This document shows positions 15,169 through 40,440 of a stretch of 64,000 nucleotides of DNA, in pieces. The translations under genes and the position numbers were made by a program. The notes beneath the pieces are model-generated. The model searched no databases, had not been told where the DNA came from, and saw only the letters and a program-made list of their open reading frames with translations. The stretch's first letter is position 1; every line of letters begins with the position of its first letter. Source of the stretch: Selaginella moellendorffii (Eukaryota > Plantae > Lycopodiophyta); NCBI RefSeq assembly GCF_000143415.4, contig NW_003314362.1, positions 532,657-596,656 on the forward strand, given 5' to 3'.

Positions 15169-16831
15169 TATAGTTGGTGTTACGCTAAGGCGATATGGTT
15201 TTTCCATTGCATTTTTTTCCAAGAAATTGGATGAAACCCAATGAAGATGGCCAACACACAAGAAAGAGATGTTTACTGTAGTGTTGGTGTTGACACAATA
15301 GAGACATTATTTAGGTGGACATACCAAGGTTTATATAGATAGTAACACACTAAGCTACTTTGCTATGCCGTCAAAGCTTACGTTGAAGCAGGCTTGTTGT
15401 CAAGAGAAGCTCATTAGATTTGATATTGAAATTATCTACAAAAATAGTAAAGACAATATTATTCCAAATGTGTTGAGTCATCAGACTCAATTCCAGGCAA
15501 TATCGGCAATCAATTCAAACTAGTTGGAGGATGTTCGGGCTTCATATAGAAGTGATTCATTGGCAAAGACAATTTTGCACTGTGTGGAGTTGTCGAAGTA
15601 GAACCCTAGTAATGACGTGGCAAAAGTTGCTCTGAAGCTTCACTTTTTAATTTGGGACGGGCTTATTATCTATAAACAAGAAAGACTATATCTTCCCTCC
15701 AAGGATCTGCAATAGCTATTTCTGCAGGAACATCATGATGTTTTGGTAGTGGGACATGGTGGTAAACAAAAAGACTTTTGCTTCATTGAAAAAGGGATTT
15801 TTTTGGTTTAGTATGGAAGGCGATGTAATGGATTATATTTGTTCTTATTCTAGCAATGTAAGCGAAGAATTGAGAAGCAAGCTGGGAAGTTGCAATGCAT
15901 TTCAACACTGGCATAGCCATTTTAGAGGGTGACACTTGACTTCATCACTTACTTGCTAAAGTCTAAGGGTTATGATACTTTGATAGTGGTTGTGGATCGG
16001 TTATCAAAAATTGTACACTTCATTCTAATTGTGGAAATAGTAAATGTGAAAAAAATAACAAAGGTCTTTTTCCATGAAATAGTCTGGGTTTATAGTCTTC
16101 CCAAAAAAATGATCTCGAATAGGGATTTGAGATTTATAGAGAAGTTTTAAGGCACACTATTCTAGTTATTCAGAATTAAGTTGAAGTTTAGTACAACTTA
16201 TCATCCTCAAACTGATGGGCAAATCGAATGTGTGAATACTCAAGTTAAGAATTATCTACAAACACTCTCTCCTTATTGCCACAATAATAGAAGGTTGGTA
16301 TTATTGATTCCCTTTATAGTCTCCACCCAAGCTTGTTGAGAAATTGGTCATCATGTATGCACTTGACTAGATGAGCATAAGGACAGAATTCTTAAATGCT
16401 ATTAGTCAAGCATATTTGACCTAGTTAAAGAAACCCATTTGTTGACTTGCACTTGCTAGTGTTGGGAACCCCACAATATTAAGTTTAGTCCCTTAATATC
16501 ATTACATGATAGCTTATCATGTCCATCAGACACCCTCGCTATCAAGTCTTATATGTTAGTTCCATTCTGTTGAGACTTATGTAGAGCAACTACACCACAA
16601 TTGGTCTAGAGCTACAAGTGGGAGATCAAGTATGGCTAGTCTTCCCAAAACTTGAACATTAAGGGATCTTTGTCTCGGAAGCTATTATCAAAATATGTTA
16701 GACCCTATCAAGTGTTGAAACAAATTGATAATATATCTTATCAGTTAGATCTTCCTACGGAAATGTCCAATGTTCATAATGTAATTCATTCCAATTTATT
16801 AACTCCTTATACTATGGATGTTGCATGTTAA
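15169..16831 (+). pseudogene. Degenerate gypsy RNase H/integrase (host of element X)
   Basis: AFFSKKLD..RWPTHKKEMF, TLDFITYL..LIVVVDRLSKIVHFI, YHPQTDGQ, PYQVLKQI..YQLDLP. Continues after X at 40215. Confidence 0.85.
16256..16569 (+). repeat. Fragment of LTR family B inserted in integrase
   Basis: Similar to 4020-4320 (acaaacactctc...tccattctg). Confidence 0.65.
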
Positions 16832-17380
16832 TGTAAGCCACAAATTTTTCCTTTCCAATTTGCCAACTTACCTCGTCTATCCGTCCGACACCACTTTGGC
16901 TTTTACTAAGTTCCCTTGCCAAGGTTCTCGCCTATGGTACCAGCTCCTACTTGGTTTCAGCTACTCACTACACGAGCAACGGAGTGTTAGCCATCCATCC
17001 ACGGATTCCCAAATCACTCCCAATCCCCCTCCCCGGGTTAGACTGGACTTAAGGTTCGGCTACACTCCCCGCAAGCACAAGCAGCCAAGCACACCAAGCT
17101 TCCAGGTTCCTAACACCCCTTGGTACCACAAGACTTGATCATAGGACCCTCTAAATCCCAAGTCTTGAGTGCAACACTTGCTTCGGGACGTCGGGGTGAA
17201 ACACCGTGGCCTAGCGGCCCGGTATGGGTACCTCTACCCCCCCACTTCCATCCCGAAGGAAGGCCCAAGCCCCTCGGAAGGGCGAGGACCAATGAGCCGC
17301 ATGGTACTCAAGTGGGGCACCACTCCACCTGAGCCGGGAGCACCGCAATCGGTTTCCCTTTCGGGAGTGGGAGCTACTCT

Positions 17381-18350
17381 NNNNNNNNNNNNNNNNNNNN
17401 NNNNNNNNNNNNNNNNNNNNNNNNNNNNNNNNNNNNNNNNNNNNNNNNNNNNNNNNNNNNNNNNNNNNNNNNNNNNNNNNNNNNNNNNNNNNNNNNNNNN
17501 NNNNNNNNNNNNNNNNNNNNNNNNNNNNNNNNNNNNNNNNNNNNNNNNNNNNNNNNNNNNNNNNNNNNNNNNNNNNNNNNNNNNNNNNNNNNNNNNNNNN
17601 NNNNNNNNNNNNNNNNNNNNNNNNNNNNNNNNNNNNNNNNNNNNNNNNNNNNNNNNNNNNNNNNNNNNNNNNNNNNNNNNNNNNNNNNNNNNNNNNNNNN
17701 NNNNNNNNNNNNNNNNNNNNNNNNNNNNNNNNNNNNNNNNNNNNNNNNNNNNNNNNNNNNNNNNNNNNNNNNNNNNNNNNNNNNNNNNNNNNNNNNNNNN
17801 NNNNNNNNNNNNNNNNNNNNNNNNNNNNNNNNNNNNNNNNNNNNNNNNNNNNNNNNNNNNNNNNNNNNNNNNNNNNNNNNNNNNNNNNNNNNNNNNNNNN
17901 NNNNNNNNNNNNNNNNNNNNNNNNNNNNNNNNNNNNNNNNNNNNNNNNNNNNNNNNNNNNNNNNNNNNNNNNNNNNNNNNNNNNNNNNNNNNNNNNNNNN
18001 NNNNNNNNNNNNNNNNNNNNNNNNNNNNNNNNNNNNNNNNNNNNNNNNNNNNNNNNNNNNNNNNNNNNNNNNNNNNNNNNNNNNNNNNNNNNNNNNNNNN
18101 NNNNNNNNNNNNNNNNNNNNNNNNNNNNNNNNNNNNNNNNNNNNNNNNNNNNNNNNNNNNNNNNNNNNNNNNNNNNNNNNNNNNNNNNNNNNNNNNNNNN
18201 NNNNNNNNNNNNNNNNNNNNNNNNNNNNNNNNNNNNNNNNNNNNNNNNNNNNNNNNNNNNNNNNNNNNNNNNNNNNNNNNNNNNNNNNNNNNNNNNNNNN
18301 NNNNNNNNNNNNNNNNNNNNNNNNNNNNNNNNNNNNNNNNNNNNNNNNNN
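17381..18350. other. Assembly gap (N)
   Basis: N run. Confidence 1.
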
Positions 18351-19478
18351 CCCCCCCCCCCCCCCCCTCCCCCCTGGGAGACGCATGCTTTGGGCTTTCA
18401 CTCCTTGACCCGTATTAGTATCTGGACTTAGTCTCTGGCTCGATCTTGGACCCAATTTCGGATCTGACTTCGGATTCGGTCTCGGACTCGATTTCGGACT
18501 CGATCTCGGACCCGATCTCGGACCCGAGCTCGGACTCGACCTTGGACTCGGTCTCGGACCCGATTTTGGATCTCAGACTCCGTCTCGAACTCAGTCTCGA
18601 ACTTGGTCCCATCCAATGAACTCTTTGTCATTTTGGTCATGCTTTCGGGGTTCCTTTAGCCTACGACACCTCGGCGAGTTGGTTCCTTACAACTCCACCA
18701 CGCATAGAAGAAGTTCGATGCCCACATCGAATGTCTCTCTTTTTGATCCTACGACTTGTTGACCATGTCTCCGAGGGCATCCCCCCACTTAGCGGTGTGC
18801 CTAAGTTAGCCTCCCCGGCCAAGAGCTCATGACAACGGAATATAGGTGTCCCTATACTCCTCACCTCACCACGCCCTAATATGGGGTCGGGACTTGAACC
18901 CAGCCTTGCTTTACTAGGGGGTTGGGACTCGAACCCAACCTCCGTAGAATACGTCTACGGATTCAACATCCCCGCAGGGAGTCGGGCGTAGCTCCCTACG
19001 CCTGGTCAACCTAGCTAACCCATGCTAATTAGCTTACCTTCGGCACGCCTTCGGGTCCCAACATATGCTATTGCTCAACTTCTCAAATTGATACTTTTAA
19101 TTGAACTTTGCATAAGTACATAGAGTTCTGCCATGCAGAAATTCCTCCACTAGACCTCACGCGTTCGCTAGGTTCTCCTCCGGTTCCCATGTTGCTTTGC
19201 AGTGTGGAAATCCTTTCTACTTCACATGGAACTCTCTCACCTCGCGTCCTTGTCGCTTGCTCTTGCGCGCATTGAGGATGGCCTCGACTTCGTATTCCTC
19301 CTCCCCTTAGATAACCTCAGGTAAAAGTCTTACTTGGTCCTTGCGAAGCGGATCCTTAAAATACGGCTTGAGTAAGTTCACGTGGAACACGGGATGCATC
19401 TTCCCCATCTCTCGAGGAAGTCAGAGACAGTAAGCCACTTTACCAATTCGAGCCTCAATCTCATAAGGCCCCGCGAAC

Positions 19479-19529
19479 CTGCTTAAGGAACTCAAGATCA
19501 ATTCATTTACAAGAATACATGCATTTTAC
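19479..19529 (-). other. 51-nt GT-AG intron-like insertion in X integrase
   Basis: Minus strand: CAA AG|gtaaaatgc...ccttaagcag|G TTC GCG GGG CCT TAT. Removal restores QRFAGPY. Confidence 0.8.
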
Positions 19530-19947
19530 CTTTGGGTCAACTTCCGGCTGATCCCACTTGGTAGCCTGAGGTTCTTGGTGTTCAGCCACACCTTCTCCCC
19601 AGCTTGGAACTCCACATCCCGACGCTTTTGGTTCGCATACTTAGTTTGCCTTTGTTGAGCCCGTTCCAAGGAATCCCTCACTAGATTCCAAATGTTGAGT
19701 CTTTCCGCCGTAAATGCCTCCACTGCGAGTAACTCTCCATGATACTCGGCCACGCCGAGTTCCACAGGACCTTCAATAGCTCGCCCATTGATGACTTCCC
19801 ATGGACTCATCCCGATGCTCGAATGTGGTGAGTTGTTATAACACATTTCCGCAAGTCCCAAATGACTTACCCAGTCGGTCTGGTCCCTTGAGACATAGCA
19901 TCGCAAATAATCCTCCAGCTGCCTGTTCACCCTTTCCGTTTGTCCGT

Positions 19948-19994
19948 CTGTCAAGAAGTGTTAGTGCCATCAATCTTGACTTAATACCCATTAC
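19948..19994 (-). other. 47-nt GT-AG intron-like insertion in X integrase
   Basis: Minus strand: CAT ACA G|gtaatggg...cactaacacttcttgacag|AC GGA CAA ACG GAA. Branch point CTAAC; removal restores YHPHTDGQTER. Confidence 0.85.
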
Positions 19995-22198
19995 CTGTAT
20001 GTGGGTGATAAATTGTGCTGAATTTCAACTTGGTGCAATACTGTTTTAGGAGCATCCTCCAGAACCTACTGGTGAAGATCTTATCTCGATATGAGATAAT
20101 CTCTTCCGGCCTTCCCCGCACTCGAACCACTTGTTCGAAGAACAGCTTCGCCACACCTTCCGCATCCACTTCCGTTGTGGTGGGTATGCAATGTGCCATC
20201 TTTGAAAATCAGTCCACCACCACGAATATCGCATCGAACCCCTCACTTGGGGTAGTCCCGTGATGAAGTCCATCGTGAGACATTTCCACGGACGATCTGG
20301 AATGGGGATGCTTTGCAACAAGCCCCCACTAGCCTTCGTCACGGCTTTAACTTGCTGACATGTTGGACATGTCTTTACATAGTCTTGGACGTCCTTAGCC
20401 ATATCTGGCCAGTGATACTTCCTTTTGAGTAAGCCCATCATCTTGGGCACTCCGCCATGTCCCGCGAGAGGTCCGTCATGACACTCTTCCAAGGCTACCT
20501 TCCTTAGTTCCCTTTCTGGAATATACACCCTCGTTTGCTTGTAATATATGAGTCCGTTGCGTTCTGCATAGATGCTCTATTTCGTTAAAGTGGGATTTAT
20601 TCAGTAAAATGGGATTAGGTACAAATTTTCAAGTATTTGAAAATGACGTGAAATTATATGTTTTTTGTCCAGGGGCTAGACATATCTGGGGCATGGTGAC
20701 TAGCGCGGTGACTTTGTGTCCAGACTGAGTCCATCTGGTTGTATAATAAATCTCATTGTCAAGGTGAACAAGCCGAATCTAAAGCTAAAGAAGAGCGATG
20801 GCATGCGCGCACACACTATTTGTTTGTTCATTGAGCGTGTGGTGAGCTTTCCAAGATGAACGTCATTCCTATTAGCCAGACATATAACTTAATGGTGAGA
20901 ACATTTAGATATTATTCAATGTTATCTTTTTCTAACGAATCTAATTGTGAAGGTGTAGCAAGAGGCATTGCTAGTCTGGAGAAGTCATTTAACTCATTTG
21001 ACCCTTAGTGTATTTTCATGAAACTAAATAACATTCATATTATTAAGGAATTTCTCTAGTACCTTTTTTTTACGACATAGAGGCTTGCATTTCTTTCAAA
21101 GGTGATTTAGTAAAAGGCCTGAGGGCACATGCCATTCTATTTCTCAGACCGGTATTAAGATATACTAGTGCAAAGGGAAAAAGGTATTTGGTGATCAAGT
21201 AAATGGCATGAGGACACACGCCATTATAAGCCTAAGCGCTAGTGGATACCTCCTTTTTGGTACTCTCAGCGGTACTATCATCCTTCTTCGGGTCAGTTGT
21301 TTTGCTTTGGATTGTTGTCTCTAACGTTACTGGGGCATTTTCGATAGTTGTTAATGTTGCCGTTTGTTCAGAAAAATGATCACCTGGAGTATAGTACGGG
21401 GAGTTTGGAAGACTTATATATTCTACATCTTCACCTATCTCCTTCTCCGTTTCCTTTTCTGCCTCACAGATTTTGTGCTTGCCATGAGAACGCTCTTCAC
21501 CCTAAAATATGGAGTTCGTTGTGTTATAAAAGGAAACCAACACACACGCTACAAGGGAATGATGGTACATAAAGCACATAAGCCCACAATATGGGTTTAT
21601 GTGCCATTAATATGGGCCACACGCCATATTATTAGATTTATGCACGTGTGATTGGTAAATGCATATGTCACATCATCTTTGTTTTACCTCACACACTATA
21701 TCAGGCCTAATGAACCATATCACATGTGCGCACATGCTATATATATGGAGAAGTATTATGCAAGGATAGAAAAATTTAATGCATGATTGTGGAGAGCAAT
21801 GGCATGAAGCCACATGCTAAATAACATTTTAGAGAAAGAATTAAAATAAAAACATGCAAATAGTACTGAGTGGACCAAGACTTAGAAGTGCACAATTGAA
21901 TGAGGTATTTATAATAAATATTTCACTCACCTCATATAGGAATGGCTACCACTCTCAAATGGCATATCGCCTCATGCCATCACTTCGCAATTTGTTATAA
22001 CAATCCGATGAATTCATATTCGGCTTGTTCACCTTGAACTTTAAGTAAGATTTACTAGAACAACTAAGAATTTATACTTGTTATTTGTATCATCTCACCT
22101 AGGAATGGCGTAAGGCCACATGCCATCACGCCTCCTCTGATTCAGATTCGGATTGTTCACCTTGAAATAAAATACATTAGAAACTTAGTAAAGGAATA

Positions 22199-25024
22199 TT
22201 AATGAATCTCACCTTGAACCCGGGTTATGAATGCTCTTGCTGCATCTCTTGCATGGTCTGGCAAGGTGATGGTGGCACTCTGCTTCCGCATCCACCCATG
22301 CACAACATTATCCACTGATATGCTCATGCTGGGATCCCTTGGATTCAGCACCCATCTCTTTTCTAGGCAATCCTTCGTATATCCGGAACTTGGCTTGAAC
22401 CACTCCACAGTTACATTGAAGGAGTTAGTTTCCGCGTCCTCCTCTACATCAGTGATGCAGCGCCCCACCCATATCATTTGTTTTTTATTACTGGGTCTGA
22501 CAAGCACGACCATTCCTTTGCAGACCTGTACTGGATTGAATGCTGAATCCGGCTTCTTGTTCCTCGGCCCACAATAGTGATCCTCAACATCGTTATTTGT
22601 CACTGCATTTCCAGAGGACATTGTTCCGCTACTATCTGGTGCTCTGGGTTCTGGCCAAAAGGACTCTTCCAATTCTTCATATACAACCGGCCCATTTTGG
22701 ATAGCAGATATAATCTTCTCCCAGTATTCGATCAAAGGCTTGCACCTCTGAAAATAAGATTCTCCACCAAACACCAACCCCCTCTTCCAGAAGGCAATAT
22801 GCTGTCTAATCCCGGCCACTATACTTTCCTGGTCTTTGAGTCCATCCAGGTGCATCGGCCGTGGGGAACCCTGAGGAATCATAGGTTCCCCAGTTATGGG
22901 ATCTCTCTTGAAGAGTTCAATACCGTCCACTGGCAGCCACACTATGTCCCATTCTCTCATCTTGTACCTCATCACTGGAGCACCGTCACGCATGCTGAAA
23001 TGAAACTGAAGAAGCTTGGAGTGGCCAATCAGTGTTTCGGATCCGTCCCTGATGTAGCCTCTTACAAACCCCTTAAAGTCTGGAACCTCTATCACAAGTG
23101 CAGCTTCAACAGTGCCTTTGATGCAATTTTGGAATTCATCGTAGAGTTGTGGGAGGGTGAGGACATTGGATTGCCGGAGGGACTCTGCCAGGTGACTAAA
23201 CATGGCATCGACGTCTTCATGAGTGTGCCCAACCATGAGAAAGCCAAGTGTAACCGTTTCAAATATGCTTTTGGCAACAAGCATCGCCAAGTACGCGAAG
23301 ACGTACATGTTTTTGTTCTCACTGCCAGCATTGTCTGTTTGGAGCAGAAGATGGGGTGGAAGGCCACATCGGCCGCAAGAACTTCCTTGAGATTCTGCTT
23401 TGTTTGGATGAGGCTGTGCATTCACCGGGCGACCAACCTCGTCGGAATGGCATGAGGCCTCACGTGATAACCCTACAATCTGACGGCCAACATATTCACT
23501 GGGATGGCATGGGGCCCCACGCGATACTGCAAGCCTTTGCTCCTCCTCCAGCTGAACCCTGTATGGGGTTCGATCGACAAGGGCCTTATGCAAGGGTTGG
23601 CCGTTCAGCTTAGTCTACGCACTTTGCAGAGACCTTAAGTGTTTTGCTAGGGACGCAATCATCATATTTGCACCCCCGCCACCCCATAGAGGTACAAAGA
23701 AGTTCCCATAGTTCTGGGCACCATGCCCATGAGCGATTATGCCAAACAGAGACACAGGCAGTTGCATGGATGAAGAGATTGCCTTGGGGGTAGGATTGAG
23801 TCGAGGTAAGCACGTCTTTTTCTGGTCCATTTTGTCGTGGATGATGCAGAGGTAAGAGTCAAGTCTCTCCATGGAGAGAATCCTGTTATGATAATATGCA
23901 GTCCTGCAGCTTCTCTGCTCGATGTTGTGGTCGAGCCTCTTTCTAACCAACGTCTCTCGCTCTTGAGCGATGCAAGAATTCTTCGACAAAGCCATTTTGA
24001 TAGCAGTGCACTCGTCACACTTTGAAAAGCTGGAGTACTTTCCTATACTCACATCCTTGAACCTGTTGCTCCACAATCTACTAAATCTAGATTGGCTCAG
24101 CTTCCTGTAGCCATTACTCTAGAGTTCCTGATTCACATCTTCCAATATGGCCCCCTTGGTATACATGGAAGGGAGAACTCGTTGGGTGTCTCGAGTTCCA
24201 TCTTCCAAGAGGCGGGTTTTATGTGGTTGCTGCTCGCTACATGTCTCAACAAACCTCTTGAAGATTGCCTCTCCATATACAACATGACCCCTGGTTTTGT
24301 GAGTACCGTCGTTCCCATGGACTGCCTGTTGAACCCTTTGTTCCTCGAACTTAGTTTTGATTCTGTAGAATGTGGTTCGAGGGACTTCATAAATGATTCT
24401 CCATGCCTTCATGCAGACCAAACCCCTCTGGAAGACCATGCCCCCCACCTGATGTTCTGAAGCATCAACAGATGACTGTAATGCCTCATACACAAAATTG
24501 CGAGCTGCCTTCCAGGACAATGTCTTGTATCTTGCTCTCTCCTCTTCAATAGCATCCCAATCAGCATGTTGACAGCACCTCCTCTTGCAACAAGCAACTG
24601 TCGAGACCATTCGAACCTCCATCGCCATTTTCTGCCTTTTCGGTTCGTTGCTCAGATCCCTTTGGCTGCGCTTTAGGAAGGTGTACTTTCTTTTCCCATG
24701 AAGAGATGTTCTGTCATCAGTTGTAGTGGTGTTTGATTGTGAATCCTTCACATTCTCAAACACTAAGTGCCTCAATTTTCACCGCACAATGCTTCCAATA
24801 GTCAAACTGTTTTCTTCTGTGTCAACAACCTCTAAAATCGCAACTCCAATATCATCCCAACCCAATTCTTGATTAGCAACCGCATCTCTTGGATCGACAA
24901 CTGTGGCTAAGCCCTCAGCTACCACCTCCCCCTCGGGGTTGTTTAGAAACACCTTTGCCTGAATCCATGTAGCACGGTTCTTAAGATCCACAGAGGGAAC
25001 ATGCGTCGCACTTGCGGAGGCCAT
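22199..25024 (-). pseudogene. DDE transposase, one 941-codon frame with three premature stops
   Basis: ORFs 25024-24779, 24775-24119, 24076-23615 and 23593-22199 share a frame. Motifs FSKCDEC, IIHDKMDQ, LQTDNAGSENKN, FLMVGHTHEDVDAMFS. A splice acceptor lies just before the ATG. Confidence 0.85.
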
Positions 25025-25645
25025 TCTGAAAGTGCAGAAAAGAAGTTAAGACCATACAAAAAATGATTGGAGAATGGCCTAAATCATAACATACCAAACA
25101 ACCTCAATAGCATGAGGCCACATGCCATTATTCAAACATGCTATTGACACCCACGTGAAATTTCGCATTCACAAAATTGGCATGAGGCCTCATGCCATCT
25201 TGATATACACACAGCTGCAGGCAAGTAAAAACATACATGACAATACGCTAGCCATGAAATTGCAAGGGCCCAAGATGGCATGTGGCCTCATGCCATTTCT
25301 AAATGTGGTCCTAAGCCATTCCATGGTGAACATACCAGGAAGCACAAGTGCCAAATATCAAGAGGAAGCGGTAGCCACACCAAAGACAGTGCCGCTCGCA
25401 ACACTGCAACTACTCGTAGCACCGCTCGCAACACCGCAACCGCTCGTAGTGCCGCTCGCACAAACTGCCACTCGCATAAACTGCCGCTCGCAATGGCGCT
25501 CGCAATGCCGCAACCGCTCGTAGACGCATAAACCATAGCTCACAACGCCGCTTACACAAGCAGCGCTCACTGCGCTCAGCAGAACCAAGAACACGGCGCA
25601 CAAAAATGATAGACCTAGGAATGAGTTCGAGAATTCAAAAATAAC

Positions 25646-27554
25646 ACACGCTTGAACGTCACATCAAATCCTTTGGCAAACCAGATCTTATGATTCCTCT
25701 GACAAATTTCAAACTGAGTAGCTTCTAGACTTTGCTGTCAGAGGTTGAACTTTGTCACATCATGTCCTTGCCTCAATCCAGCTGTGCCATGTCAGTGATT
25801 CGAATTTTGCCATGCCATGTCAGCGATCCGCGCCAAGATTATTCGTCGTGTAAAGGAATAATTATGCTGTGTGTGTACGTCCATTTATGGCAATATAAGG
25901 CCACACGCCATTCAAAGAATAATGCTAGTCGAGCATTTTTTGGTGCATTTTTGGGTTCAAAATTGCATGAGCCCACACGCTATAAAGTTTACCTGTACCA
26001 AAAATAGAAACAGCTTTATTTACTTGGGAATTTAAGTGGTTGAGGCATTTTTAAACTTACAAACACATGCCCTACTTACATTCCTTTGGTTGCTTAAAAT
26101 TCAAAAATATTATAAACTTTTCTTTTTGCATTTTCAATGTTTTCAATTATGGTTTTTGATTTTCACAGGACCAGCCTAGTAATCTATTTGCATCCCGTCA
26201 TGTTTATAGCTAGCTTTCGTTTGTCCCCTTCGCTAGCCTGAGATACATCTGCTCGGCATCTGCCTCTTACAGCATTTGCCCAGAAAGGGCATCTTCACGC
26301 AGCATTTGCCACATATTTAGGGTTTAGGGTTTAGCAATTCAGTAGCTTGATAAACATGCAAATACAGAACTTGATGCAAAATCCTTTGATATGTCACAAT
26401 GCCCCTAGGACCATAAACACATTTCAATAGAGAGGGTCCTTTCATTTCATAACTCCTTACGTAGATCTTGGTGAAACCAGAGTTAGTGAAGTTAGTTTCT
26501 TGTGATCCCGCATCTGATTGTGATGTCCCTTTGCAGTGTCGATGGAAAGGTCAATGCACACCAAACTGTAAAATCTTGGAGCAAAATAACGGTCGGATCT
26601 ATGGCAAATGCCCCTGAAACATTGTAAGGCTCGTGTGGTCTCATGTGGTGTCCGATTGAGATGCTTCTTTGCAGGGTCATCAAGAAAGACATTGTATACC
26701 ATTCTGTAAAATCTAGTTGCGATCTAACGGTTGGATCTCCAGAAAACTCAAAAAAATCTCGCGCGTGTCAGAATATTCTAGGAATATACTCCTATGTGCC
26801 CCTGAAAATGGCATGCGGCCCCACGCCATTCAAAAGATAACGCCAGATGACGCCGAGCATTTTTTGGTGCATTTTTTGGGATCAAAATTGCATGAGCCCA
26901 CACGCTTGAACGTCACATCAAATCCTCTGACAAACCAGATCTTATAATTCCTCTGACAAATTTCAAACTGAGTAGCTTCTAGACTTTGATTTCGGACATT
27001 GAACTTTGTCACATCATGTCCTTGCCTCGATCCAGCTGTGCCATGTCAGTGATTCAAACTTTGTCAGCGATCCGTGCCAAGATTATTCGCCATGTAACTG
27101 CTCGGCATCTGCCTCTTACAACATTTGCCCAGAAAGGGCATCTTTCTTCACGCAGCATTTGCCACATGTTTAGGGTTTAGGGTTTAGGGTTTAGCAATTC
27201 AGTAGCTTGATAAACATGCAAATACAGAACTTGATGCAAAATCCTTTGATATGTCAGGACCATAAACACATTTCAATAGAGAGGGTCCTTTCATTTCATA
27301 ACTCCTTACGTAGATCTTGGTGAAACCAGAGTTAGTGAAGTTGGTTTCTTGTGATCCCGTATCTGATTGTGATGTCCCTTTGCAGTGTCGATGGAAAGGT
27401 CAATGCACACCAAACTGTAGAATCCTGGAGCAAAATAACGGTCGGATCTATGGCAAATGCCCCTGAAACATTGTAAGGCTCGTGTGATCTCATGTGGTGT
27501 CCGATCGAGATGCTTCTTTGCAGGGTCATCAAAAAGGACATTGTATACCATTCT
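25646..27554. repeat. Internal direct duplication with telomere-type TTTAGGG runs
   Basis: 26249-26705 matches 27098-27554; 25646-25852 matches 26899-27097; TTTAGGG x2 at ~26316 and x3 at ~27169. Confidence 0.85.
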
Positions 27555-28475
27555 TTATTTAGCTGAACATCTGGCATTTTTGGAAATACAAGATGCTTTG
27601 GAATATCCAATCATGCATGGTATAAATATAGCGAGGGTATTAAATGATATCCCAATCATGATCTTTCTTTTGGATTTCGCGTGTATGCAGTCCGAGGAAT
27701 GATGACGTTGCGGATTTCTTTTGGATTTCACGTGCATGCATGCGCACGGCGATCCAGAAATTAATGGTGGCGCCCAAGTCCGAGGAATGATGACGTGGCG
27801 GGATTACCAACCGTTGTGACATTTCGCGCATGTGAGGTTAGGTTTTGCATCGTACTCGCGCTCGCACACTCGCGCTCGCATCGCGCTCTCACTCGCGATC
27901 ACGCTCACATTCGCGCTTATCTACCTTCTCTACAGGTTTCTCGTGTGCATCGGCGTCCACTCGCGCTTGCATCACACTCGCGCTCGTATCGCGCTCGCAT
28001 CGCACTCGTGTGCATTGGCATCCACTTCAAGACACACCTAGTTTGTAACTTCGCCGCCAACTCCGCCGCCCACTCCGCCACCCACACGCAGCCCACTTGG
28101 CGTCCCGGGAGATTTCAGCGCCACTCTCCAACTGTAAGTGGCAGAGTAGCCTTGCTGCTATGATCCGCTGCACACACAGTGCACATTCGCCAGCGAGTCC
28201 GGCCTCGATTGTCATGCCTTCATTCGGCTTCAAATAGTAAGTTTTTTAGGCCAAGTAGAAAATGGCATGAGGCCACATGCCATTCAGTAGCAACATTGGC
28301 ATGCACCGATTGGGCTCTCGAGTGCAGTCCGGTTATAGATGGCATGTAGCCTCACGCCATTTTAGGATGCAGCCTCAAGACATCTGATATAGTGGTGAAT
28401 GGCGTGTGGCCTCACATTATTTCCAGCTGCTAGTTTTTCATCTGTCAACTCTAATTGTTGTGCATTTCTGAACAG

Positions 28476-29654
28476 GCAAGGAATTGCGTTCTTCTTCCAG
28501 CCACTGTCAATGTGGATGCAAAGAAGGGGGAGGAGCTCACCAGTTGGACTTTCGGGATGGAAGGCGAGGATCTAAGGCTGTACAACACAGATGGTGGGAG
28601 AAAAGAATGCATGGGGATCCTCATCCAAGTGACAGACACTCCATGCAGTTCCATGCAAGAATATGGACTGGCACTTGTGGTAGAGACAGCGTCCGCCTTC
28701 AAGATCCACCTTGCACATCCTAGCGGCTTCCCGGAGGGGGGCAGCGGCTATGAGGAATTCCTAGAGGGAGCTAGGGAGAGGTTGTCCAGGAGGCCCACAA
28801 TTTCAAAGACGCTGCGGGTCTATGAAGATCACATGGAATCCACGGACCTCACCTACGGCGATGTTCAAAAACTATATTCCAACATTGAGCCGTTGAGAGT
28901 GCCTCCAGTTCGCGAAGCGAAGGGGAAGGGGGTCGATCTGGAAACTACCCCGAAGCAGAAAAGGGTGGTCAAGCTCAAGCCGACATCCGACTCTCCTGCT
29001 CCAAAAAAGAAGCTACTCGGTGATGCCATTGCCTCGGGTTCGAACACTATACCCACCAAAAAGAAGAGCCGCAAAGAGCAGAAAGAGCAAGAAGAGGCAG
29101 CAAAAATTGTCGCAGATAATAGTACTTGTTACTATTCCAACAAAGTATATACAATCGACGTGAGCCGTATCGACATCCAAAGCAAATACAACCACAGGCT
29201 AGTATCTGATGAGTGGGTGGAGAAACTGAAGCAGAAGATGCTGGCAAGTCCAGTAACACTCGACATCGCAGACGTGATCCCCTACTACCGAACAATGAAG
29301 GGCGAGACGAGGTTTCCAGACTTGATCAATAGGAAGGTGTTGGACGATCAGAACATCCGGTTCTATGCCGTCTCCGGGCAGCATTTTAGCTTGGCAATGC
29401 AAAAGATAGTTGTGGATATTATGGTGGGCGAGGAGGTGAAGAAAGTCTTCAAGACAAGAGTTGTCCGCCTGATAAAAGGCAACTCGCCCCTCCGATCTAT
29501 CATATACATCTCCCACGCGCAGAATGTCAAGCAAGAAATGTGCTACAAATCGGGTCTACACGAGACATTGGCACGAACACGGAAGCTCTGGGTTCAACTG
29601 AAGAAGCCACAAAAACCAGGACAAGGACGTGCACTAGCAACTAGCGTCTGGCAG
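28476..29654 (+). CDS. Large exon of transposon cargo gene with a ParB/sulfiredoxin-like N-domain signature
   Basis: Acceptor aacag before 28476 and donor CAG|gtaagc after 29654. YTIDVSRIDIQSKYNHRLVSDEWVEKLKQKML...FYAVSGQHFSLAMQKI resembles the ParB_N pattern (R..V..L, GxH box). Confidence 0.6.
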
Positions 29655-29689
29655 GTAAGCCTCGTTGCATGTGGCATAGCATGTGGCCT

Positions 29690-30285
29690 TGAGACGTCAA
29701 AACATGAAATACCTCAGCCATAAATGCAGGACCATTATCCGAAAGAATCCGCTCTGGACAAGAATGTTGGAACACCACTCGATTGAGGAGAAAGTATCCA
29801 ACAGCAGTTGCAGAGGCGCTAGCAAAAGCACCAACTTCCACCCAACGAGTCAAGTAGTCAAAAGCAATAATAACATACTCATTGCCAGCAGTCGACCGTG
29901 GAAAAGGTCCCATAAGATCAAACGCCACCAACTCAAACGGACAGAAAACTGCAATTGACTCCAACCGTCCTTCCGCAGCACAAGGGGGAGTATTACGAGT
30001 TTGGCACCAAACGCAGCTACGCACATACCGGATAACATCACGTCGCATCTCTGGCCAATAGAAAGACCTGCGCAGCTTCTTGGTCACACGACGATGTCCC
30101 ATATGCCCACCTAGAACAGGAGAATCATGATAGGCATGGAGAAACCGTGGAATAAAGATAGAAGGCACCACCAGTCATAAATGATCATCAGGATCCGTCC
30201 CCACAAAATAAAGAAGGCCATCTTCAAGGCGATATTGAGAATGTAAATGCCGGAAAGGCAAGTCATCCGCAAGTGATGCAGGATC
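29690..30285 (-). pseudogene. Captured gypsy-type integrase fragment (family D)
   Basis: AYHDSPVLGGHMG..FYWPEM..CVWCQ..FDLMGPFP..SDNGPAF; homologous to 55230-55535 and 54380-54545. Confidence 0.85.
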
Positions 30286-30633
30286 CTTGTAGCGCACGTG
30301 GTTTTGACCCTTTATCCTATGGTGATTTACCATAGGATAACACCACGATAAACCCTCTTTGTGCCACGTGATAGATGCCACATGTCACATGCCACGTGTC
30401 CATGCCACGTGTCCACAGGAACCCGAGGTTCAGGGCCTTGGGCCACTGAATGAAGGAACAGTGCCAAACTCCCAAATATGGAGCCGAGGAGTGACAGAAC
30501 TGAACCACGAAGCAACTCCCGAGCATGAAGCCCAAGGAGCGAAGGGGCAGGAGCCCGAAGCGACTTGGAATAGTCCTGGAGCAACCAGCATCCCAATGCC
30601 AGAACCAGCATGCAAAACGGAGCCAAACAAAGT

Positions 30634-31625
30634 CCTGCGAAATGCGGGGTACCTCCCCAACTTTTCGTGAAAATCGCGCGTTTTGGGCCCCAAAAAAAGC
30701 CCGCGGAACACGTGGTACCTTCCCAACTTTTCGCGAAAAATCGCGCGTTTTGAGCCCCAAAACGCGCCCCGCGAAATGCGGGGTACCTCCCCAACTTTTC
30801 GTGAAAATCGCGCGTTTTGGGCCCCAAAAAAAGCCCGCGGAACACGTGGTACCTTCCCAACTTTTCGCGAAAAATCGCGCGTGATTTTCACGAAAAGTTG
30901 GGGAGGTACCCCGCATTTCGCAGCGTGCATTTTGGGGCCCAAAACACGGTCTTCGTGAATTGTTGGGGAGGTACCACACGTCCCGCAGGTTTTTTGGCAC
31001 CCAAAAAGAACACGGGATTGTGGAGGTACACTGCAGCTTTGGATCAGCTGCCCCACACTATAAGAGTAGGGGGAGTGTGAAATATTTCAGAGTGGGTTCA
31101 AACCGTGACTATGGCACTGGATCCCATCAAACCTCCAAAGTTAAGCGTCCCTGGGCTTGAATAGTACTGGGCTGGGTGACCATCCGGGAAGTCCAAGTGA
31201 CCCCATCTTTTTTTTTTCCTTACAAGTCATTTATTTTTGTAAGATCATTGTTTTAATATATAAACTTTGAGTATTTTTCCATAGCATATAAGTGTATGGT
31301 CTTTAAATACTACTTACAATTGTGAATGTAAGGTGTATTTGCCAAATTGTGTCGTTAGCTAGTTATTAACTAGGATATAAGTTAGAAATAATGTGTTGGT
31401 GATTGTCACCACGTGGCATGGCAAGCAAGTCCAAACATATGTGTGTCACGTGGCATACAAGGTCAAGGACACTAAACTCTAACTATGAGAACAAGCCAAA
31501 GGGCATGCCACGTGTCAATGTGACACATTGACAACCATAAAACTCGTTTTGGGGCCCAAAACGCGCGATTTTTCGCGAAAAGTTGGGAAGGTACCATGTG
31601 TTCCGCGGGCTTTTTTGGGCCCAAA
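30634..31625. repeat. 134-bp tandem unit with inverted copies bracketing the 5S gene
   Basis: 30637-30770 and 30771-30882 are direct; 30883-30923 and 31545-31625 are inverted copies. Confidence 0.85.
31090..31207 (+). rRNA. 5S rRNA gene or 5S-derived copy
   Basis: Co-linear with plant 5S: GGATCCCATC, GTTAAGCG, ATAGTACTGGGCTGGGTGACC, GGGAAGTCC. TATAA at 31059-31063 and a poly-T terminator at 31208-31217. Confidence 0.85.
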
Positions 31626-31828
31626 AGCTTTCTCTGGATTCGAAAGCTCCATAGCTGTCTTCAGTTCCTCAGGCACAGGTAAATTGACCTCCCTCAGATC
31701 AATTCGATCGGCCTTGTCGAACGAAGCTGGGAAGTCACTCCAGTCCCACTCTGCTGCAGGACCAATAACAAGGGCGAGTGTGAAGATGCGGACATTCGTC
31801 GGTATCTTCTTCTTAGCCATTATCCCAT

Positions 31829-34450
31829 GCTATGGAGCTTTCAAATCCAGAGAAAGCTAAAGGTGCAGCATGGGAAATGCTCAGCTGGGTCTTCAATGCA
31901 ATAGCGGGTGGGTCACCTGCTTCCGACTCCAAGGGCAAATGCGTTGTTGAGTACAACTGCTGCGGACTATTCTTTCGAGCCGCACTACTCAAGGGTGTCC
32001 CGTGTGTTGCGGTGACAAACTCCATTGAAGAGGTGACTTCAATGGAGCATATAATTACAGTTGCCAAAGAAAATCAGTATCTTCTCTGCGAACCTGGTGA
32101 GTACGCACTTTAAGTTTAAATGTTATCTCACAAGCTCTGTATGCAGGAGCGTGGCCACCCCCAGATGCTGAAACGGCGTTAACAGCTACTGTTGAAGATA
32201 CCCATGTTGGGCCGAGCTCACAACCTGCACAAGGTAAGGTCACGTGAGGCCTCACGCCATTTTGATTATAGATCGTTGTGAATATTCAGACACGAGGATT
32301 GAAAAGGGCACTGGTGGCGCATCGAAGAAGGACAAACAGACAAGCAATAGGAAAAAAGGAGGTACAAATTATATTTGTGTAAGCTCCTGAATTTGGACTT
32401 CCCGGGAGGTCACCCAGCCCAGTACTATTCAAACCCAAGGACGCTTAACCCCAAGTATCCCAAGACCCTTAACCGATTGGAAAAGGGGGTGCACTCTTGT
32501 TCATGGGCCCTTTCCCTCTATATTTGAACCCCATGGATCGTCTCTCAAGTCGTTCCCTTTGGTTGCTTACAATCCACCACGCTTCCCTGCAAGTTCACGC
32601 CCTCGTGAACGGAAGCTGAGAGCCGCAACTCTCTCGAGAGCCCCGCTCTCTTGACACCCTACCCCTCGGGTCGAGCCCAGCGGGAGCAAACTGGACCAGC
32701 CAGATGTCAATCAACATGTGGTGCGATTCCCTTAGCCAACCAACATGTGGTGCGATTCCCTTAGCCAACCAACAGAGTCGGACCCGAGACCCCTCTGATA
32801 CCAAATGTAAGCTCCTGAATTTGGACTTCCCGGGAGGTCACCCAGCCCAGTACTATTCAAACCCAAGGACGCTTAACCCCAAGTATCCCAAGACCCTTAA
32901 CCGATTGGAAAAGGGGGTGCACTCTTGTTCATGGGCCCTTTCCCTCTATATTTGAACCCCATGGATCGTCTCTCAAGTCGTTCCCTTTGGTTGCTTACAA
33001 TTTGCAATGGCGTGTGGTCTCATGCCATTCCTTGCAGGAGACACTTCTTCAAAGGCAAAACAGGCAAGCACTAGCCAAGCTCAAACTGACAGTGGTCATA
33101 AAAAGCGAAAGCACGTTGGACAGTCGTTGGGATCAGAGGCGTTTGATTCAAAAAGGAAGAAGGGCAACGAAAAGATGATAGGTAATGCCTCGCGGTTATG
33201 GCGTGTGTGCTCATGCCATTCATTGCAGATCAAGGCTGAGTGAAAGCAGCCAATCACCACCTCCTGACTCAGATTCCTATGGCAGACTCCCCTTCCCCAA
33301 TCTCAATGGAGAGGTACAATGGATGAGGGATGCTTTTCAAGTCAGGGCCACGTTTTTCTCATCTCGTCGTTTTCGAAGGGTGCAAGAACGTGCAGAAACC
33401 ATGTTAAGACAGTCAGGTGAGGATACGGTCCTAGGTCACGCACTAAAACAGGCTATGGATGTCTTGTATTTTGAGATGGAGACTCGGCCAGATGATTTTC
33501 CCAAGATGGTCCTGGAAGAACAAGCCATCCAGCCTGAGCAGCCTATGGAAGAAATGCAGGAGGGGGATGAGGAGCCAGAGAAAGATAATGAGCAGGAAGA
33601 GCAGAAGGACGAAGAGGAGGACAAAGAAGAGGAGGACGAAGAAGAGGAGGACGAAGAGGACTTGGATGGTCCTCACAATGGTGACGATCATAACGACAAC
33701 GACGATGATGACGACGATGGCCAGCCTGAGGTGGCCAAAGAGTAGCGGAGGAAGGTCATACAAGACAAACCATCAGGTAAATAATAGTACATCCATTCCT
33801 AACCTTTTACCATTTCTAACATTGTCCATATAGGTCGCAGAGCAAATGGTAAGTAGAGATTATTCAGTTGAATTAAGATACAAACTCTAGCCTTTAGTGT
33901 CGAGGAAGGATAGTGCCAAGCAAGGGTCGAAACGTATGTCCAATCCTTCAGAATCAGCAGTGCGCCCAAGTGATATCGGTCCTAGTTCCTCAATAGCAGT
34001 TGATGGTAAATACAGTATAGTCGATTCAATGTGCTAATGAGTTTGTTTTTAGTAGCCAGTAAGGAGGATACCATCTCAATCGAAGGGAGATATTTGGACA
34101 TGCATATGGATCCGCCAGTGGACTCTACTTGCCTGCAAGAGTCATCAGAGCTGGTGGAGGCTACTATCCATAGCCTGGAACACCGCCCCTGCTGCCTGTT
34201 CGGTCATGTCCACTTTGCCAACGGAGGCACCAGCTGAAATGGCGTGTGATCACACGCCATCGGAACCACCCCATGCCACTGTTGAGCCAGTTGTACCAGA
34301 GTCTACAGCTGAAATGGCATGTGCCCACACGCCATCGGATGCGATTGACCCCACATTGCAAAGGAGAGTATTTCCGCCCTTCACGTTTCCTCGACCAAAA
34401 CCCTCTCAACGACCATCGGGAGCACCATTCGCTAATATTGTAGATGGTAA
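31829..34450 (+). pseudogene. Further exons of the cargo gene (acidic and low-complexity regions)
   Basis: Open segments bounded by GT-AG sites, e.g. ~31829-32096, 32148-32233, 33038-33181 and 33229-33776 (E/D-rich). The exact gene model is uncertain. Confidence 0.5.
32378..32999 (-). mobile_element. Cassandra-type TRIM with 5S-derived LTRs (622 bp)
   Basis: 194-bp LTRs at 32378-32571 and 32806-32999, identical by eye; TSD ATTTG; PBS TGGTATCAGAG at 32793-32803. LTRs contain the 5S A/C-box region gttaagcg..tagtactgggctgggtgacctcccgggaagtcc on the minus strand. Confidence 0.95.
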
Positions 34451-34493
34451 AATTGACTTGTACCATTTTTTATGCTGACGCATTTCATTTCAG

Positions 34494-35119
34494 AGTCACG
34501 GCGAAGGTACTGTATCGTTTTTGATCTGAACGGTGTCCTTTTCTCCCATGAGCGTGGCTCGTCCTCGAATGTCACTGCACCCTCCAAAGCCTGTGGTCGC
34601 AAGTTGGTCAAAAGAGACAGATTCACATTAATCACACGGGAGAAACTGCGGGATCTAATAATGACCATGCGACACTTAAAACAGAGGGCCGGGTTCAATT
34701 TGCAATTGGGAGTTTGGACATCCATGATGCGCCACAATGCATTAACGTTACTACAGATGATGCACGATCAGACGCGAGTAATATTACCATTTGACTTTCT
34801 CCTAACGCAGGAGGATTGCTTGACTATGGTCCATGTGAGGGGTAACAAGCCCATCTTCGTCAAGCCAGAGGCTGTAGTGATGAACCGGACTGCTAGGTCA
34901 AGTGAAATCCTCATCATCGATGACTCGCCGATTAAAACTGCAGCAAACACGCACACATATGCAGTGCACCCCATCTCTTGCAGTATGGAAACTAGGGAGA
35001 AGAAACCGTATGTTCTGGGGAACCTTGCAAAACGGCTTGGAGCAATGGTGATAGAGAACCGGCCAGTCCAGAAGGTGGCTGCAGAAATCAACCAAATGGC
35101 AGATGGAACGGTATATTAG
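34494..35119 (+). CDS. HAD-superfamily FCP1/NIF-like phosphatase domain (terminal cargo exon)
   Basis: IVFDLNGVL (motif I variant), LGVWTSM (motif II), ILIIDDSPIK (motif IV). Confidence 0.75.
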
Positions 35120-35802
35120 AAGTCATTTGATCGGACAGACACCAGTCATCATTTATGGCATGTATATTGTCTAGCCAAGCACTATCCGCATCTCCATAAT
35201 CTGCTCAACCGGATGGGTTCTTCGACTACTGAACATGAGCGTGGACGTATTAGAGAAGAGATGGCATTACTATTGGGTTTAAATCCTGATAGTGTGGAGA
35301 GTGATGAAATTCCAAGATTATTGTATAGGTGTTGGAGGCAAAAAATAACAGTTTGAGATGGTATGTATTTATTTAAAAATGTAACTTATTATGGCATGGG
35401 GTTCCATGCCATTGTATTAATATTAAAAGACAATTCTTTGAGAGGATTTGCATTATACTAGAAATGTTACAGCATGTTATTGGAAGTCTACGAAGTTATT
35501 TTATTAATAAGGGGAAAGTAAAGATTGAATGGGGACTTGGGCTCCACCTAGACTCGCAGCAACTGAGCCAATATTAAAAGGATGGAAAGAAATTGGATGA
35601 CGATGACAAGGAGAAGAGAGAGGTGAAGCAGTGGCAGGGGGAGGAGAAGTGATTGAGTAGACATTTCCTTGTTTAAAATAAAATGGCATGTGCCTCAATG
35701 CAGTTGAATTTTGTTATATTTATATACTATATAAAGGTTTGGAAACCTTATTTTACAAGTGGGATAATGACAATTCCCACTTTAACAAAATAGAGCTTAT
35801 AG

Positions 35803-40214: not shown

Positions 40215-40440
40215 GGGGAGATTCGTTCACCATCAAAAGTTATGGACAGCGAACCTGAATTTGAAGTTGAATGCATCTTATCATGTAACTGAAAACATGG
40301 TGGTTATTCTAAAGAATATTTAATTAAATGGAAAGGTTACCCATCTTGTGAATCAACATGGGAGCCTCTCAGTAACCTTATGCATGCCCATGAGCTTGTC
40401 ATGGAGTATGAGAATTGTAATAAAAAATCACTTCTGTAAA
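40215..40440 (+). pseudogene. Chromodomain of the older host element
   Basis: EFEVECIL...EYLIKWKGYPSCESTWEPLSNL. Confidence 0.85.

What the first reader, a model, noticed from the sequence alone, without database searches (positions are those of the whole stretch)
19479..19994. Two tiny spliceosomal-type introns inside an LTR retrotransposon integrase
Seen: AT-rich inserts of 47 nt (19948-19994) and 51 nt (19479-19529), each starting GTAA and ending CAG on the sense strand; one has a CTAAC branch point. Removing them exactly restores YHPxTDGQTER and QRFAGPY. Unspliced, one frameshifts and the other adds an immediate TAA. The older integrase at 16200 and 16690 lacks them. Each sits within a 4-bp direct repeat (ACAG, AGGT). 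Established: replication through RNA should purge sense-strand introns. Inference: either the family packages unspliced RNA and needs splicing to make integrase, or an introner-like process is adding introns at proto-splice sites. Two precise cases in 500 bp are unlikely to be random filler.
Basis: partly seen in the sequence, partly recalled or inferred. Interest (0 to 1): 0.88.

Follow-up and report, generated by a model that had tools for sequence, protein, structure and literature searches.

The report
Retrotransposon integrase split by two introns
A dead copy of a very abundant plant jumping gene (it fits the published SM1-Galahad of the spikemoss Selaginella) has two tiny host-style introns in its integrase gene; DNA copies keep them and RNA-type assemblies lack them exactly, which is rare for an element that copies itself through RNA.

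Summary
On the minus strand, a 47-nt insert (19994..19948) and a 51-nt insert (19529..19479) start GTAA and end CAG. Removing them restores exact collinearity with five intronless integrases.

The host element is a complete LTR retrotransposon with 1,051-bp LTRs, a tRNA-Met primer site and a TTAAC target duplication. A 15-kb DNA transposon later split it. It matches every checkable feature published for SM1-Galahad of Selaginella moellendorffii, including an ORF1 of exactly 3,885 nt that ends inside intron 1.

Laid reads show the inserts are family-wide. DNA contigs cover them about as deeply as the exons. RNA-type contigs from two studies skip exactly 47 and 51 nt.

So these are real introns. 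Only spliced RNA can encode the catalytic glutamate, the C-terminal module and the chromodomain. Copies bearing the introns must come from unspliced RNA.

The introner or repair-filler alternative is not supported. This copy itself is dead (stops, frameshifts, transposon insertion).

The closest precedent is the intron of Ogre elements. I found no paper describing introns in this family. The scan has reported the same thing on at least eight other pieces of this genome.

Still open: RNA status of the contigs, raw-read support, and rare intronless copies.

The parts
40210..40214 (-). Target site duplication TTAAC, 5' side
   Evidence: Read directly. The same 5 bases follow the 3' LTR.
39159..40209 (-). 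5' LTR, 1,051 bp, TG...CA, with a 12-nt tandem array and a poly-G tract
   Evidence: It is 98.5% identical to the 3' LTR over 549 bp and 93-95% over the repeat-bearing part.
39144..39155 (-). Primer binding site TGGTATCGGAGC, 3 nt after the LTR
   Evidence: Read. Its complementarity to the 3' end of initiator tRNA-Met is from my own knowledge. The published family has a tRNA-Met PBS.
35799..39099 (-). gag (CCHC), protease, reverse transcriptase and RNase H coding region of this copy. It is damaged by a frame change near 38191-38264 and by TAA stops near 36613 and 36210.
   Evidence: ORFs; sequence; plant Ty3/gypsy homologues.
20572..35798 (.). NOT part of the element. A 15-kb DNA transposon inserted later into the RNase H-integrase linker, with TSD CTAT and about 25-bp terminal inverted repeats. 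It encodes a DUF7869 protein.
   Evidence: RNA-type contig X15 record 10 runs from 20571 straight into the sequence of 35801+ (table 7).
19995..20571 (-). Integrase exon 1: H2C2 zinc finger and the two catalytic Asp region. In this copy it carries a 1-nt deletion at 20248 and a TGA at 20211-20209.
   Evidence: Pfam PF17921 at 3.8e-22. Reading. Most of the family (96% of the depth there) and the RNA-type contig X15 have CGA at 20211. X15 and about a tenth of the DNA depth there have the extra base at 20248.
19948..19994 (-). Intron 1, 47 nt, phase 1, GTAATG...CTAAC...CAG, four codons before the catalytic Glu of DGQTER
   Evidence: Skipped by X15 record 9 and X17 record 12. Spanned by DNA contig X1 record 5 (table 8).
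19530..19947 (-). Integrase exon 2: DGQTER (catalytic Glu) to KLTQ(R)
19479..19529 (-). Intron 2, 51 nt (52 nt in about half of the family's DNA depth), phase 2, GTAAAA...CAG
   Evidence: Skipped by X15 record 9 and X17 record 11. Covered by DNA contig X1 record 4. The indel at 19523 is in 31 DNA contigs.
19097..19478 (-). Integrase exon 3: GPY/F module and chromodomain. In this copy it has four in-frame stops, one of them TGA at 19159-19157; the true stop is at 19099-19097.
   Evidence: The family majority and both RNA-type contigs have CGA at 19159.
18692..19096 (-). 3' untranslated internal region up to the 3' LTR
16832..18691 (-). 3' LTR, holding an assembly gap of 970 N (17381-18350) that begins at the poly-G tract
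16827..16831 (-). Target site duplication TTAAC, 3' side

Best explanation
The two inserts are genuine U2-type spliceosomal introns that belong to the whole retrotransposon family. The family is most likely SM1-Galahad, a Ty3/gypsy chromovirus of Selaginella moellendorffii.

Shown here:
- The inserts sit in a copy that was inserted by retrotransposition (two LTRs, TTAAC duplication).
- They are present in the family's DNA at about the depth of the exons.
- They are absent to the base from RNA-type assemblies of two studies.

What follows from the sequence:
- Unspliced RNA encodes Gag-PR-RT-RNaseH plus an integrase cut off after YHPHT. That is before the catalytic Glu of the D,D,E triad.
- RNA spliced at intron 1 only would give an integrase core that stops at QR*, without the GPY/F module and chromodomain.
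- Only doubly spliced RNA gives the full integrase.

Inferred:
- The RNA that is packaged and reverse-transcribed is the unspliced one, as in retroviruses. That is why new copies keep the introns.
- Spliced mRNA supplies integrase, so host splicing sets the integrase dose, much as the Ogre intron sets the dose of RT-RH-INT.

This particular copy is dead and only records the family's structure.
For: Anatomy of the copy.

Collinearity: five intronless homologues align across both junctions with exactly one residue (the split codon) between exon pieces.

DNA run X1:
- 18,734 contigs were laid.
- Depth over the intron bins is 0.53-0.93 million, against 0.79-1.04 million in the neighbouring exon bins.
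- Record 5 spans intron 1 with 50 and 40 nt on the two sides. Record 4 covers all of intron 2.

RNA-type contigs (table 8):
- X15 record 9 (1,083 nt) joins 20000-20319, 19528-19952 and 19140-19476 without a gap in the record.
- X17 records 11 and 12, from another study, show the same two skips of 51 and 47 nt.

Raw RNA run X21 (table 2): the bin arithmetic 8+64+37+41 = 150 fits one read, 19844-19952 plus 20000-20040. That is a read spliced at intron 1. Another read lies over 19512 inside intron 2.

Indel pattern: a 1-nt length polymorphism in about 57% of DNA depth lies inside intron 2 (19523). The listed exon indels are rare (table 4).

Family fit:
- From the gag ATG (39099) to the stop in intron 1, less one CTAT, is 3,888 nt, that is 3,885 plus the stop.
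- That is the ORF1 length published for SM1-Galahad. The paper also reports no intact copy and two short downstream ORFs, the last with the chromodomain.
Against: - X15 and X17 are labelled RNA only by a guess of the tool.
- The raw RNA run gave just 8 reads, and no junction reached the listing threshold.
- Ten joints were not shown. A rare intronless DNA copy, which could be the source of the transcripts, is therefore not excluded.
- The RNA-type contigs carry letters that are rare in DNA, so they come from few loci.
- Selective packaging of unspliced RNA is inferred, not shown.
Confidence: 0.8

Rival explanations
1. There are two forms of the family. A rare intronless, autonomous master copy is transcribed and supplies integrase. 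The abundant insert-bearing copies are non-autonomous derivatives mobilised in trans. On this reading the inserts are never spliced.
For: The RNA-type contigs share letters that are rare in DNA: 19331 T>C at 2.8% of depth, and 19565 C>T in one contig (table 3). Ten joints were not displayed, so a low-depth DNA contig with the joined form cannot be ruled out.
Against: No X1 joint of 47 or 51 nt appears among those listed (table 5). The authors of the family description found no intact copy among hundreds. Two independent inserts that both carry GTAA...CAG, AT-richness, a CTAAC in one, and host-intron size would be an odd coincidence for unspliced junk.
Confidence: 0.1
2. The inserts are copy-specific, gained after this copy inserted. 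They would come from an introner-like element or from filler DNA at a repaired break, with the 4-bp repeats as its footprint.
For: ACAG and AGGT direct repeats flank the inserts. Such repeats are described for introners and for repair-mediated intron gain (my own knowledge).
Against: DNA contigs of thousands of family fragments carry the inserts at the same places. The published reconstruction breaks at the same points. The insert sequences have no other copy in the window. Similarity to flanking exons or to the rest of the element is not significant after correcting for nine tests. AGGT is largely what the splice consensus itself predicts.
Confidence: 0.02
3. The inserts are inert decay insertions of an extinct family. 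On this reading the 'spliced' contigs are artefacts of assembly or of DNA in those libraries.
For: The RNA label of X15 and X17 is a guess. Logan contigs are unitigs.
Against: Two studies give the same two exact skips at GT..AG borders. X15 and X17 have no depth over 18700-19083, which is equally abundant in DNA (table 2). Their total size is 26-31 Mb, against 210 Mb for the DNA run. One raw RNA read fits the intron 1 splice.
Confidence: 0.05

Closest known systems
Ogre elements (Ty3/gypsy, Tat/Ogre lineage) of pea and Medicago
   Same: An intron lies inside the polyprotein coding region of an LTR retrotransposon. It is retained in genomic copies and spliced from only part of the transcripts. 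Its removal is needed to translate the downstream enzymes (PMC6317226 and PMC12786077, which cite Neumann 2003 and Steinbauerova 2008).
   Different: [quoted passage not shown] Here there are two introns of 47 and 51 nt inside the integrase itself, one of them between the catalytic Asp residues and the Glu. The element is a chromovirus, not a member of the Tat/Ogre lineage.
shGAG splicing of EVADE (Arabidopsis Ty1/copia) and BARE1 (barley)
   Same: Host splicing of a retrotransposon RNA sets the ratio of its proteins, while unspliced RNA stays the full-length genomic form (PMC12786077, PMC5580714, PMC3735527).
   Different: There, splicing removes coding sequence to make a Gag-only mRNA, and the unspliced RNA already encodes the whole polyprotein. 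Here the unspliced RNA cannot encode a working integrase.
Retroviruses and Cer1 of C. elegans: spliced subgenomic mRNAs beside unspliced genomic RNA
   Same: The unspliced, intron-containing RNA has to be exported and packaged, while the spliced RNA makes a further protein (PMC10309623).
   Different: Those spliced mRNAs encode accessory or envelope proteins. No dedicated export protein or element has been identified here.
SM2-Galahad, the sister family in the same genome
   Same: Same clade, with a group I chromodomain, a tRNA-Met PBS and a 5-bp target duplication.
   Different: It is described with one uninterrupted ORF of 4,731 bp through the integrase and chromodomain, so it has no introns. 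That dates the gain to the SM1 lineage. This is an inference from the paper; I did not check it on sequence.

Membership tests
U2-type spliceosomal intron | GT at the 5' end and AG at the 3' end, in the sense orientation of the gene | tested here: met
   Both inserts show it: CAG|GTAATG...GACAG|A and AAG|GTAAAA...AGCAG|G.
U2-type spliceosomal intron | Branch point and pyrimidine-rich stretch before the 3' splice site | tested here: inconclusive
   Intron 1 has CACTAAC followed by CTTCTT. Intron 2 has only a weak TTGAT and TTCCTT. No scoring model of the host's introns was available.
U2-type spliceosomal intron | Present in DNA and removed exactly from RNA | tested here: met
   DNA contigs cover both inserts. 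RNA-type contigs of two studies skip 47 and 51 nt, and one raw RNA read fits the intron 1 splice. Caveat: the RNA status of the contig runs is the tool's guess.
U2-type spliceosomal intron | Removal restores the reading frame and collinearity with intronless homologues | tested here: met
   In five homologues exactly one residue lies between consecutive exon pieces.
SM1-Galahad (Novikova et al. 2012, PMC3350952) | LTRs over 1 kb with TG..CA and poly-G tracts of variable length | tested here: met
   The 5' LTR is 1,051 bp, TG...CA, with a G run at about 39890. The 3' LTR's G run is longer and ends in the assembly gap.
SM1-Galahad (Novikova et al. 2012, PMC3350952) | PBS complementary to tRNA-Met just after the 5' LTR | tested here: met
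   TGGTATCGGAGC at 39155..39144. The match to the tRNA is from my own knowledge.
SM1-Galahad (Novikova et al. 2012, PMC3350952) | ORF1 of 3,885 bp (Gag to core integrase, no chromodomain), then two short ORFs, the last with a group I chromodomain | tested here: met
   3,885 nt plus the stop from ATG 39099 to the stop in intron 1, leaving out the DNA transposon and one CTAT. In exon 2, the stretch from its first ATG to the stop is 318 nt, against 316 published. Exon 3 carries the chromodomain.
SM1-Galahad (Novikova et al. 2012, PMC3350952) | Hundreds of copies, about 95% alike | tested here: met
   18,734 DNA contigs were laid on 1.9 kb. By likeness they split 4,606 at 99% or more, 7,212 at 95-99% and 6,916 at 90-95%.
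SM1-Galahad (Novikova et al. 2012, PMC3350952) | Nucleotide identity to the published consensus, and the species being Selaginella moellendorffii | not testable with these tools
   The consensus is not held here and organism names were coded. Protein searches show only plant Ty3/gypsy relatives at 40-60% identity. The species name comes from earlier scan notes.
Ogre-type intron-containing retrotransposon | [quoted passage not shown] | tested here: not met
   The introns lie in the integrase, and the element has a C-terminal chromodomain. It works like Ogre but is not a member.
Introner / introner-like element | Many near-identical copies of the intron sequence in unrelated genes, with copy-specific presence | tested here: not met
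   There is no second copy of either insert in the window. The inserts occur at fixed places throughout the family. The rest of the genome could not be searched.

The most novel reading that the evidence does not exclude
The family is obligately splice-gated. Its genomic RNA cannot encode an active integrase, and the two introns yield three outcomes: no integrase, a core integrase without the GPY/F module and chromodomain, or the full integrase. Host splicing would then set both the dose of integrase and its chromatin targeting. The unspliced state, or the intron sequences themselves, would be part of what marks an RNA for export and packaging. That would explain why intronless progeny do not take over.
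Probability: 0.3. Interest if true: 0.75.

Novelty: new variant of a known kind. Interest (0 to 1): 0.6.

Why it matters
Elements that replicate through RNA are expected to lose sense-strand introns. A high-copy family that keeps two of them inside its integrase is a natural test of how a retroelement separates its 'message' RNA from its 'genome' RNA.

It would also explain why SM1-Galahad was published as a family with no intact copy and a detached chromodomain ORF. Annotation pipelines that demand one open frame will misjudge such elements as dead.

Beyond that, it gives a second, independent case beside Ogre of splicing used to dose pol products in plants. Because the introns are so small, the two RNA forms differ by only 98 nt, which makes the system easy to test.

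Tried and rejected
- **Fungal RIP reading:** dropped. The window's GC swings first suggested it, but the low-GC stretch by the element is an N gap and the relatives are plant elements.
- **Domesticated integrase gene:** rejected. The copy has LTRs, a PBS, a target duplication and a very high copy number.
- **Other family copies in the window:** only LTR or 3'-end fragments were found, at 13281-14066, 14388-14758, 8325-8658 and 55719-56098. None has an integrase.
- **Protein databases:** no protein more than 45% identical to exon 2 turned up. No annotated family member could be fetched to compare DNA.
- **Origin of the introns:** similarity to flanking exons (the tandem-duplication model), to each other, and to the rest of the element on both strands was tested. 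The best P values were 0.011 and 0.013 among nine tests, which is not convincing.
- **Dispersed copies of the inserts:** none in the window.
- **Raw RNA reads:** only 8 reads were laid from 12% of one run, too few for a listed junction.
- **Literature:** searches found no description of introns in this family. The word 'intron' does not occur in the family's paper.
- **Papers not held:** the Ogre splicing paper and the Selaginella genome paper are not in the library.

Full report
**What is in the sequence**

Read on the minus strand, the integrase frame ...KFSTIYHPHT is broken after the first base of an Asp codon by 47 nt (19994..19948). This insert runs GTAATG ... CACTAAC ... GACAG. The frame then resumes as DGQTERVNRQLEDYL.

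About 420 nt later...SRKLTQ plus two bases of an Arg codon is broken by 51 nt (19529..19479). This insert runs GTAAAA ... AAGCAG. The frame resumes as FAGPYEIEARIG, followed by a chromodomain.

- Left in, intron 1 adds GNGY and a TAA.
- Left in, intron 2 gives AGG TAA.
- The inserts are 38% and 31% GC against 50% in the exons.

Searched as three separate pieces against five intronless relatives, consecutive pieces are always separated by exactly one residue, the split codon. The older integrase at about 15980-16830 on the plus strand belongs to another family (about 38% identity). It is uninterrupted at both places.

**What the element is**

The integrase is the 3' part of a complete LTR retrotransposon on the minus strand.

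- 5' LTR: 40209..39159, 1,051 bp, TG...CA, with a 12-nt tandem array and a poly-G tract.
- Primer site: TGGTATCGGAGC, three bases after the 5' LTR.
- Coding region: gag with a CCHC knuckle, protease, RT and RNase H down to 35799.
- Interruption: a 15-kb DNA transposon (20572-35798), with TSD CTAT, about 25-bp inverted ends and a DUF7869 protein.
- After the transposon: the integrase from 20571, then a 3' untranslated stretch.
- 3' LTR: 18691..16832, which contains a 970-N assembly gap beginning at its poly-G tract.
- TTAAC flanks both LTRs.

The LTRs are 98.5% identical over 549 bp and 93-95% over the repeat-bearing part. So this copy arrived by retrotransposition some time ago and has since decayed. 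Its defects are:

- TAA stops near 36613 and 36210;
- a frame change near 38191-38264;
- a 1-nt deletion at 20248;
- TGA at 20211 and 19159, and further stops in the chromodomain.

Where one search lists them, the family majority has the intact letter.

**Which family**

My first guess was a RIP-affected fungus. The paper describes:

- no intact copy among hundreds of copies about 95% alike;
- a reconstructed element of about 7.5 kb;
- LTRs over 1 kb with TG..CA and poly-G tracts of variable length;
- a tRNA-Met PBS;
- an ORF of 3,885 bp running from Gag to the core integrase without a chromodomain;
- two short downstream ORFs, the last encoding a group I chromodomain.

In this copy, the distance from the gag ATG (39099) to the stop inside intron 1 is 3,888 nt, leaving out the DNA transposon and one copy of CTAT. 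That is 3,885 nt plus the stop. All the other listed features are met as well.

The paper never uses the word intron. Its three-ORF structure is what the two introns produce. I could not align the published consensus, and the run tool coded the species names. Protein searches gave only plant Ty3/gypsy relatives at 40-60% identity. Family membership is therefore very likely but not proven at the nucleotide level.

**Family-wide presence, and removal in RNA**

I laid 18700-20600 on four runs.

DNA run X1 (210 Mb of contigs):
- It gave 18,734 short contigs.
- Summed depth over the bins that hold the introns is 0.76 million for intron 2 and 0.93 and 0.53 million for intron 1. The adjoining exon bins show 0.79-1.04 million.
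- One contig spans intron 1 with 40-50 nt on either side, and another covers all of intron 2.
- The only common indel in the stretch is a 1-nt length difference inside intron 2 (19523, about 57% of depth). Tolerance of such an indel is expected of non-coding sequence.

RNA-type runs:
- In X15 (26 Mb of contigs), one 1,083-nt contig joins 20000-20319, 19528-19952 and 19140-19476 with no letters between.
- In X17, from another study, two contigs show the same two skips.
- The skips are 47 and 51 nt. Their apparent borders are shifted by a few bases because of the terminal repeats.
- A second X15 contig runs from 20571 straight into the sequence found at 35801 and beyond, so the transcribed copies lack the DNA transposon.
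- Both runs have no depth over 18700-19083, which is just as abundant in DNA. That argues against them being DNA libraries, although their RNA label is the tool's guess.

Raw RNA run X21:
- Only 8 reads were laid.
- The bin depths on one strand (8+64+37+41 = 150 nt) fit a single 150-nt read covering 19844-19952 and 20000-20040. That is a read spliced at intron 1.
- Another read lies over 19512 inside intron 2, so it is unspliced RNA or contaminating DNA.
- This agrees with partial splicing but is thin evidence.

**How it most likely works**

Shown:
- the introns are in the DNA of the family, including a copy with the hallmarks of retrotransposition;
- transcripts lacking them exist.

It follows from the reading frame that:
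- unspliced RNA encodes everything up to a truncated integrase with the zinc finger and the two Asp residues but without the catalytic Glu;
- splicing intron 1 alone would give a core integrase ending at QR*, without the GPY/F module and chromodomain;
- only double splicing gives the full enzyme.

Inferred:
- As for retroviruses and Cer1 (PMC10309623), the unspliced RNA is the one exported, packaged and reverse-transcribed.
- Spliced mRNA supplies integrase, presumably as a Gag-Pol that co-assembles with the shorter product.
- Splicing efficiency would then set the integrase dose. [quoted passage not shown]

Why intronless progeny do not take over is unexplained. Selective packaging, or a benefit of the introns for expression or against silencing, are possibilities I could not test.

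**Rivals**

- *A rare intronless master copy feeding the RNA contigs.* This is not excluded, because ten joints were not displayed and the RNA contigs carry variants that are rare in DNA. However, no such DNA joint was listed, the family's authors found no intact copy, and two junk inserts with full splice signals would be a coincidence. I give it 0.1.
- *Copy-specific gain by an introner or repair filler.* This is contradicted by the family-wide presence and by the absence of other copies of the inserts in the window. I give it 0.02.
- *An assembly artefact or DNA in the 'RNA' runs.* I give it 0.05.

How the introns arose in the ancestor of the family is open. The 4-bp repeats are compatible with a staggered-break or transposon-like insertion, but AGGT is close to what the splice consensus alone predicts. 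Tests for a duplication origin were not significant.

**Novelty and score**

Introns in LTR retrotransposons are known: Ogre; the shGAG splicing of EVADE and BARE1; spliced mRNAs of retroviruses and Cer1. So the principle is not new.

What I found no paper for, after four literature searches, is this combination: two mini-introns inside the integrase of a chromovirus, one between the catalytic residues, kept across a family of many copies. It also explains a published puzzle about this family. I rate it a new variant of a known kind, with interest 0.6.

The scan has already reported the same feature on at least eight other pieces of this genome. This window adds four things:
- a dated, TSD-flanked copy;
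- the exact ORF1 match to the paper;
- two-study RNA-type support;
- one raw read fitting the splice.

Noticed in passing
window 20572-35798: A 15-kb DNA transposon lies in the RNase H-integrase linker of the retrotransposon. Its terminal inverted repeats read A(A/T)GCTCTATTT(T/C)GTTAAAGTGGGA. The TSD is CTAT (35802-35799 and 20571-20568). It encodes a DUF7869 protein at 22199-23593 (minus) and holds many short palindromes of the type ATGGCATGTGG..CCAT. It is already the subject of scan note s1-374831.
   Followed up: partly
window 17381-18350: An assembly gap of 970 N starts at the poly-G tract of the 3' LTR. The 414-420 aa 'ORFs' on both strands at 17169-18455, and the low GC reported there, are artefacts of the N run.
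   Followed up: yes
window 37856-37898 (minus strand): A candidate further splice lies upstream of the protease: GTATGT ... CCTAAC ... AG, 43 nt. Unspliced, the frame stays open into the protease. Removal would shift the frame to an early stop, as in shGAG splicing of EVADE/BARE1. Earlier scan notes mention extra upstream introns in this family.
   Followed up: no
window 19331 and 19565 (table 3): Both RNA-type contigs carry letters that are rare in the family's DNA: 2.8% of depth at 19331, and a single contig at 19565. Only one or a few loci of this large family therefore seem to be transcribed.
   Followed up: no
window 15686-16831 (+), continuing at 40215 onward: An old, AT-rich Ty3/gypsy element of another family is the target into which the Galahad copy inserted. 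Its integrase has no introns.
   Followed up: partly
window 13281-14066, 14388-14758, 8325-8658, 55719-56098: These are fragments 79-85% identical to the 3' end and LTR of the element. They are relatives or older members of the same LTR family, and none has an integrase.
   Followed up: no
runs X4, X5, X7: Runs labelled with three other (coded) organisms hold 0.28-0.32 of the sampled 31-mers of the integrase region. Near-identical family members may therefore exist in related species, or those samples may be mixed.
   Followed up: no
window 29842-30141 (minus), inside the DNA transposon: A weak tblastn match (32% identity) to the integrase zinc-finger region. It may be a nested or captured retroelement fragment.
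   Followed up: no
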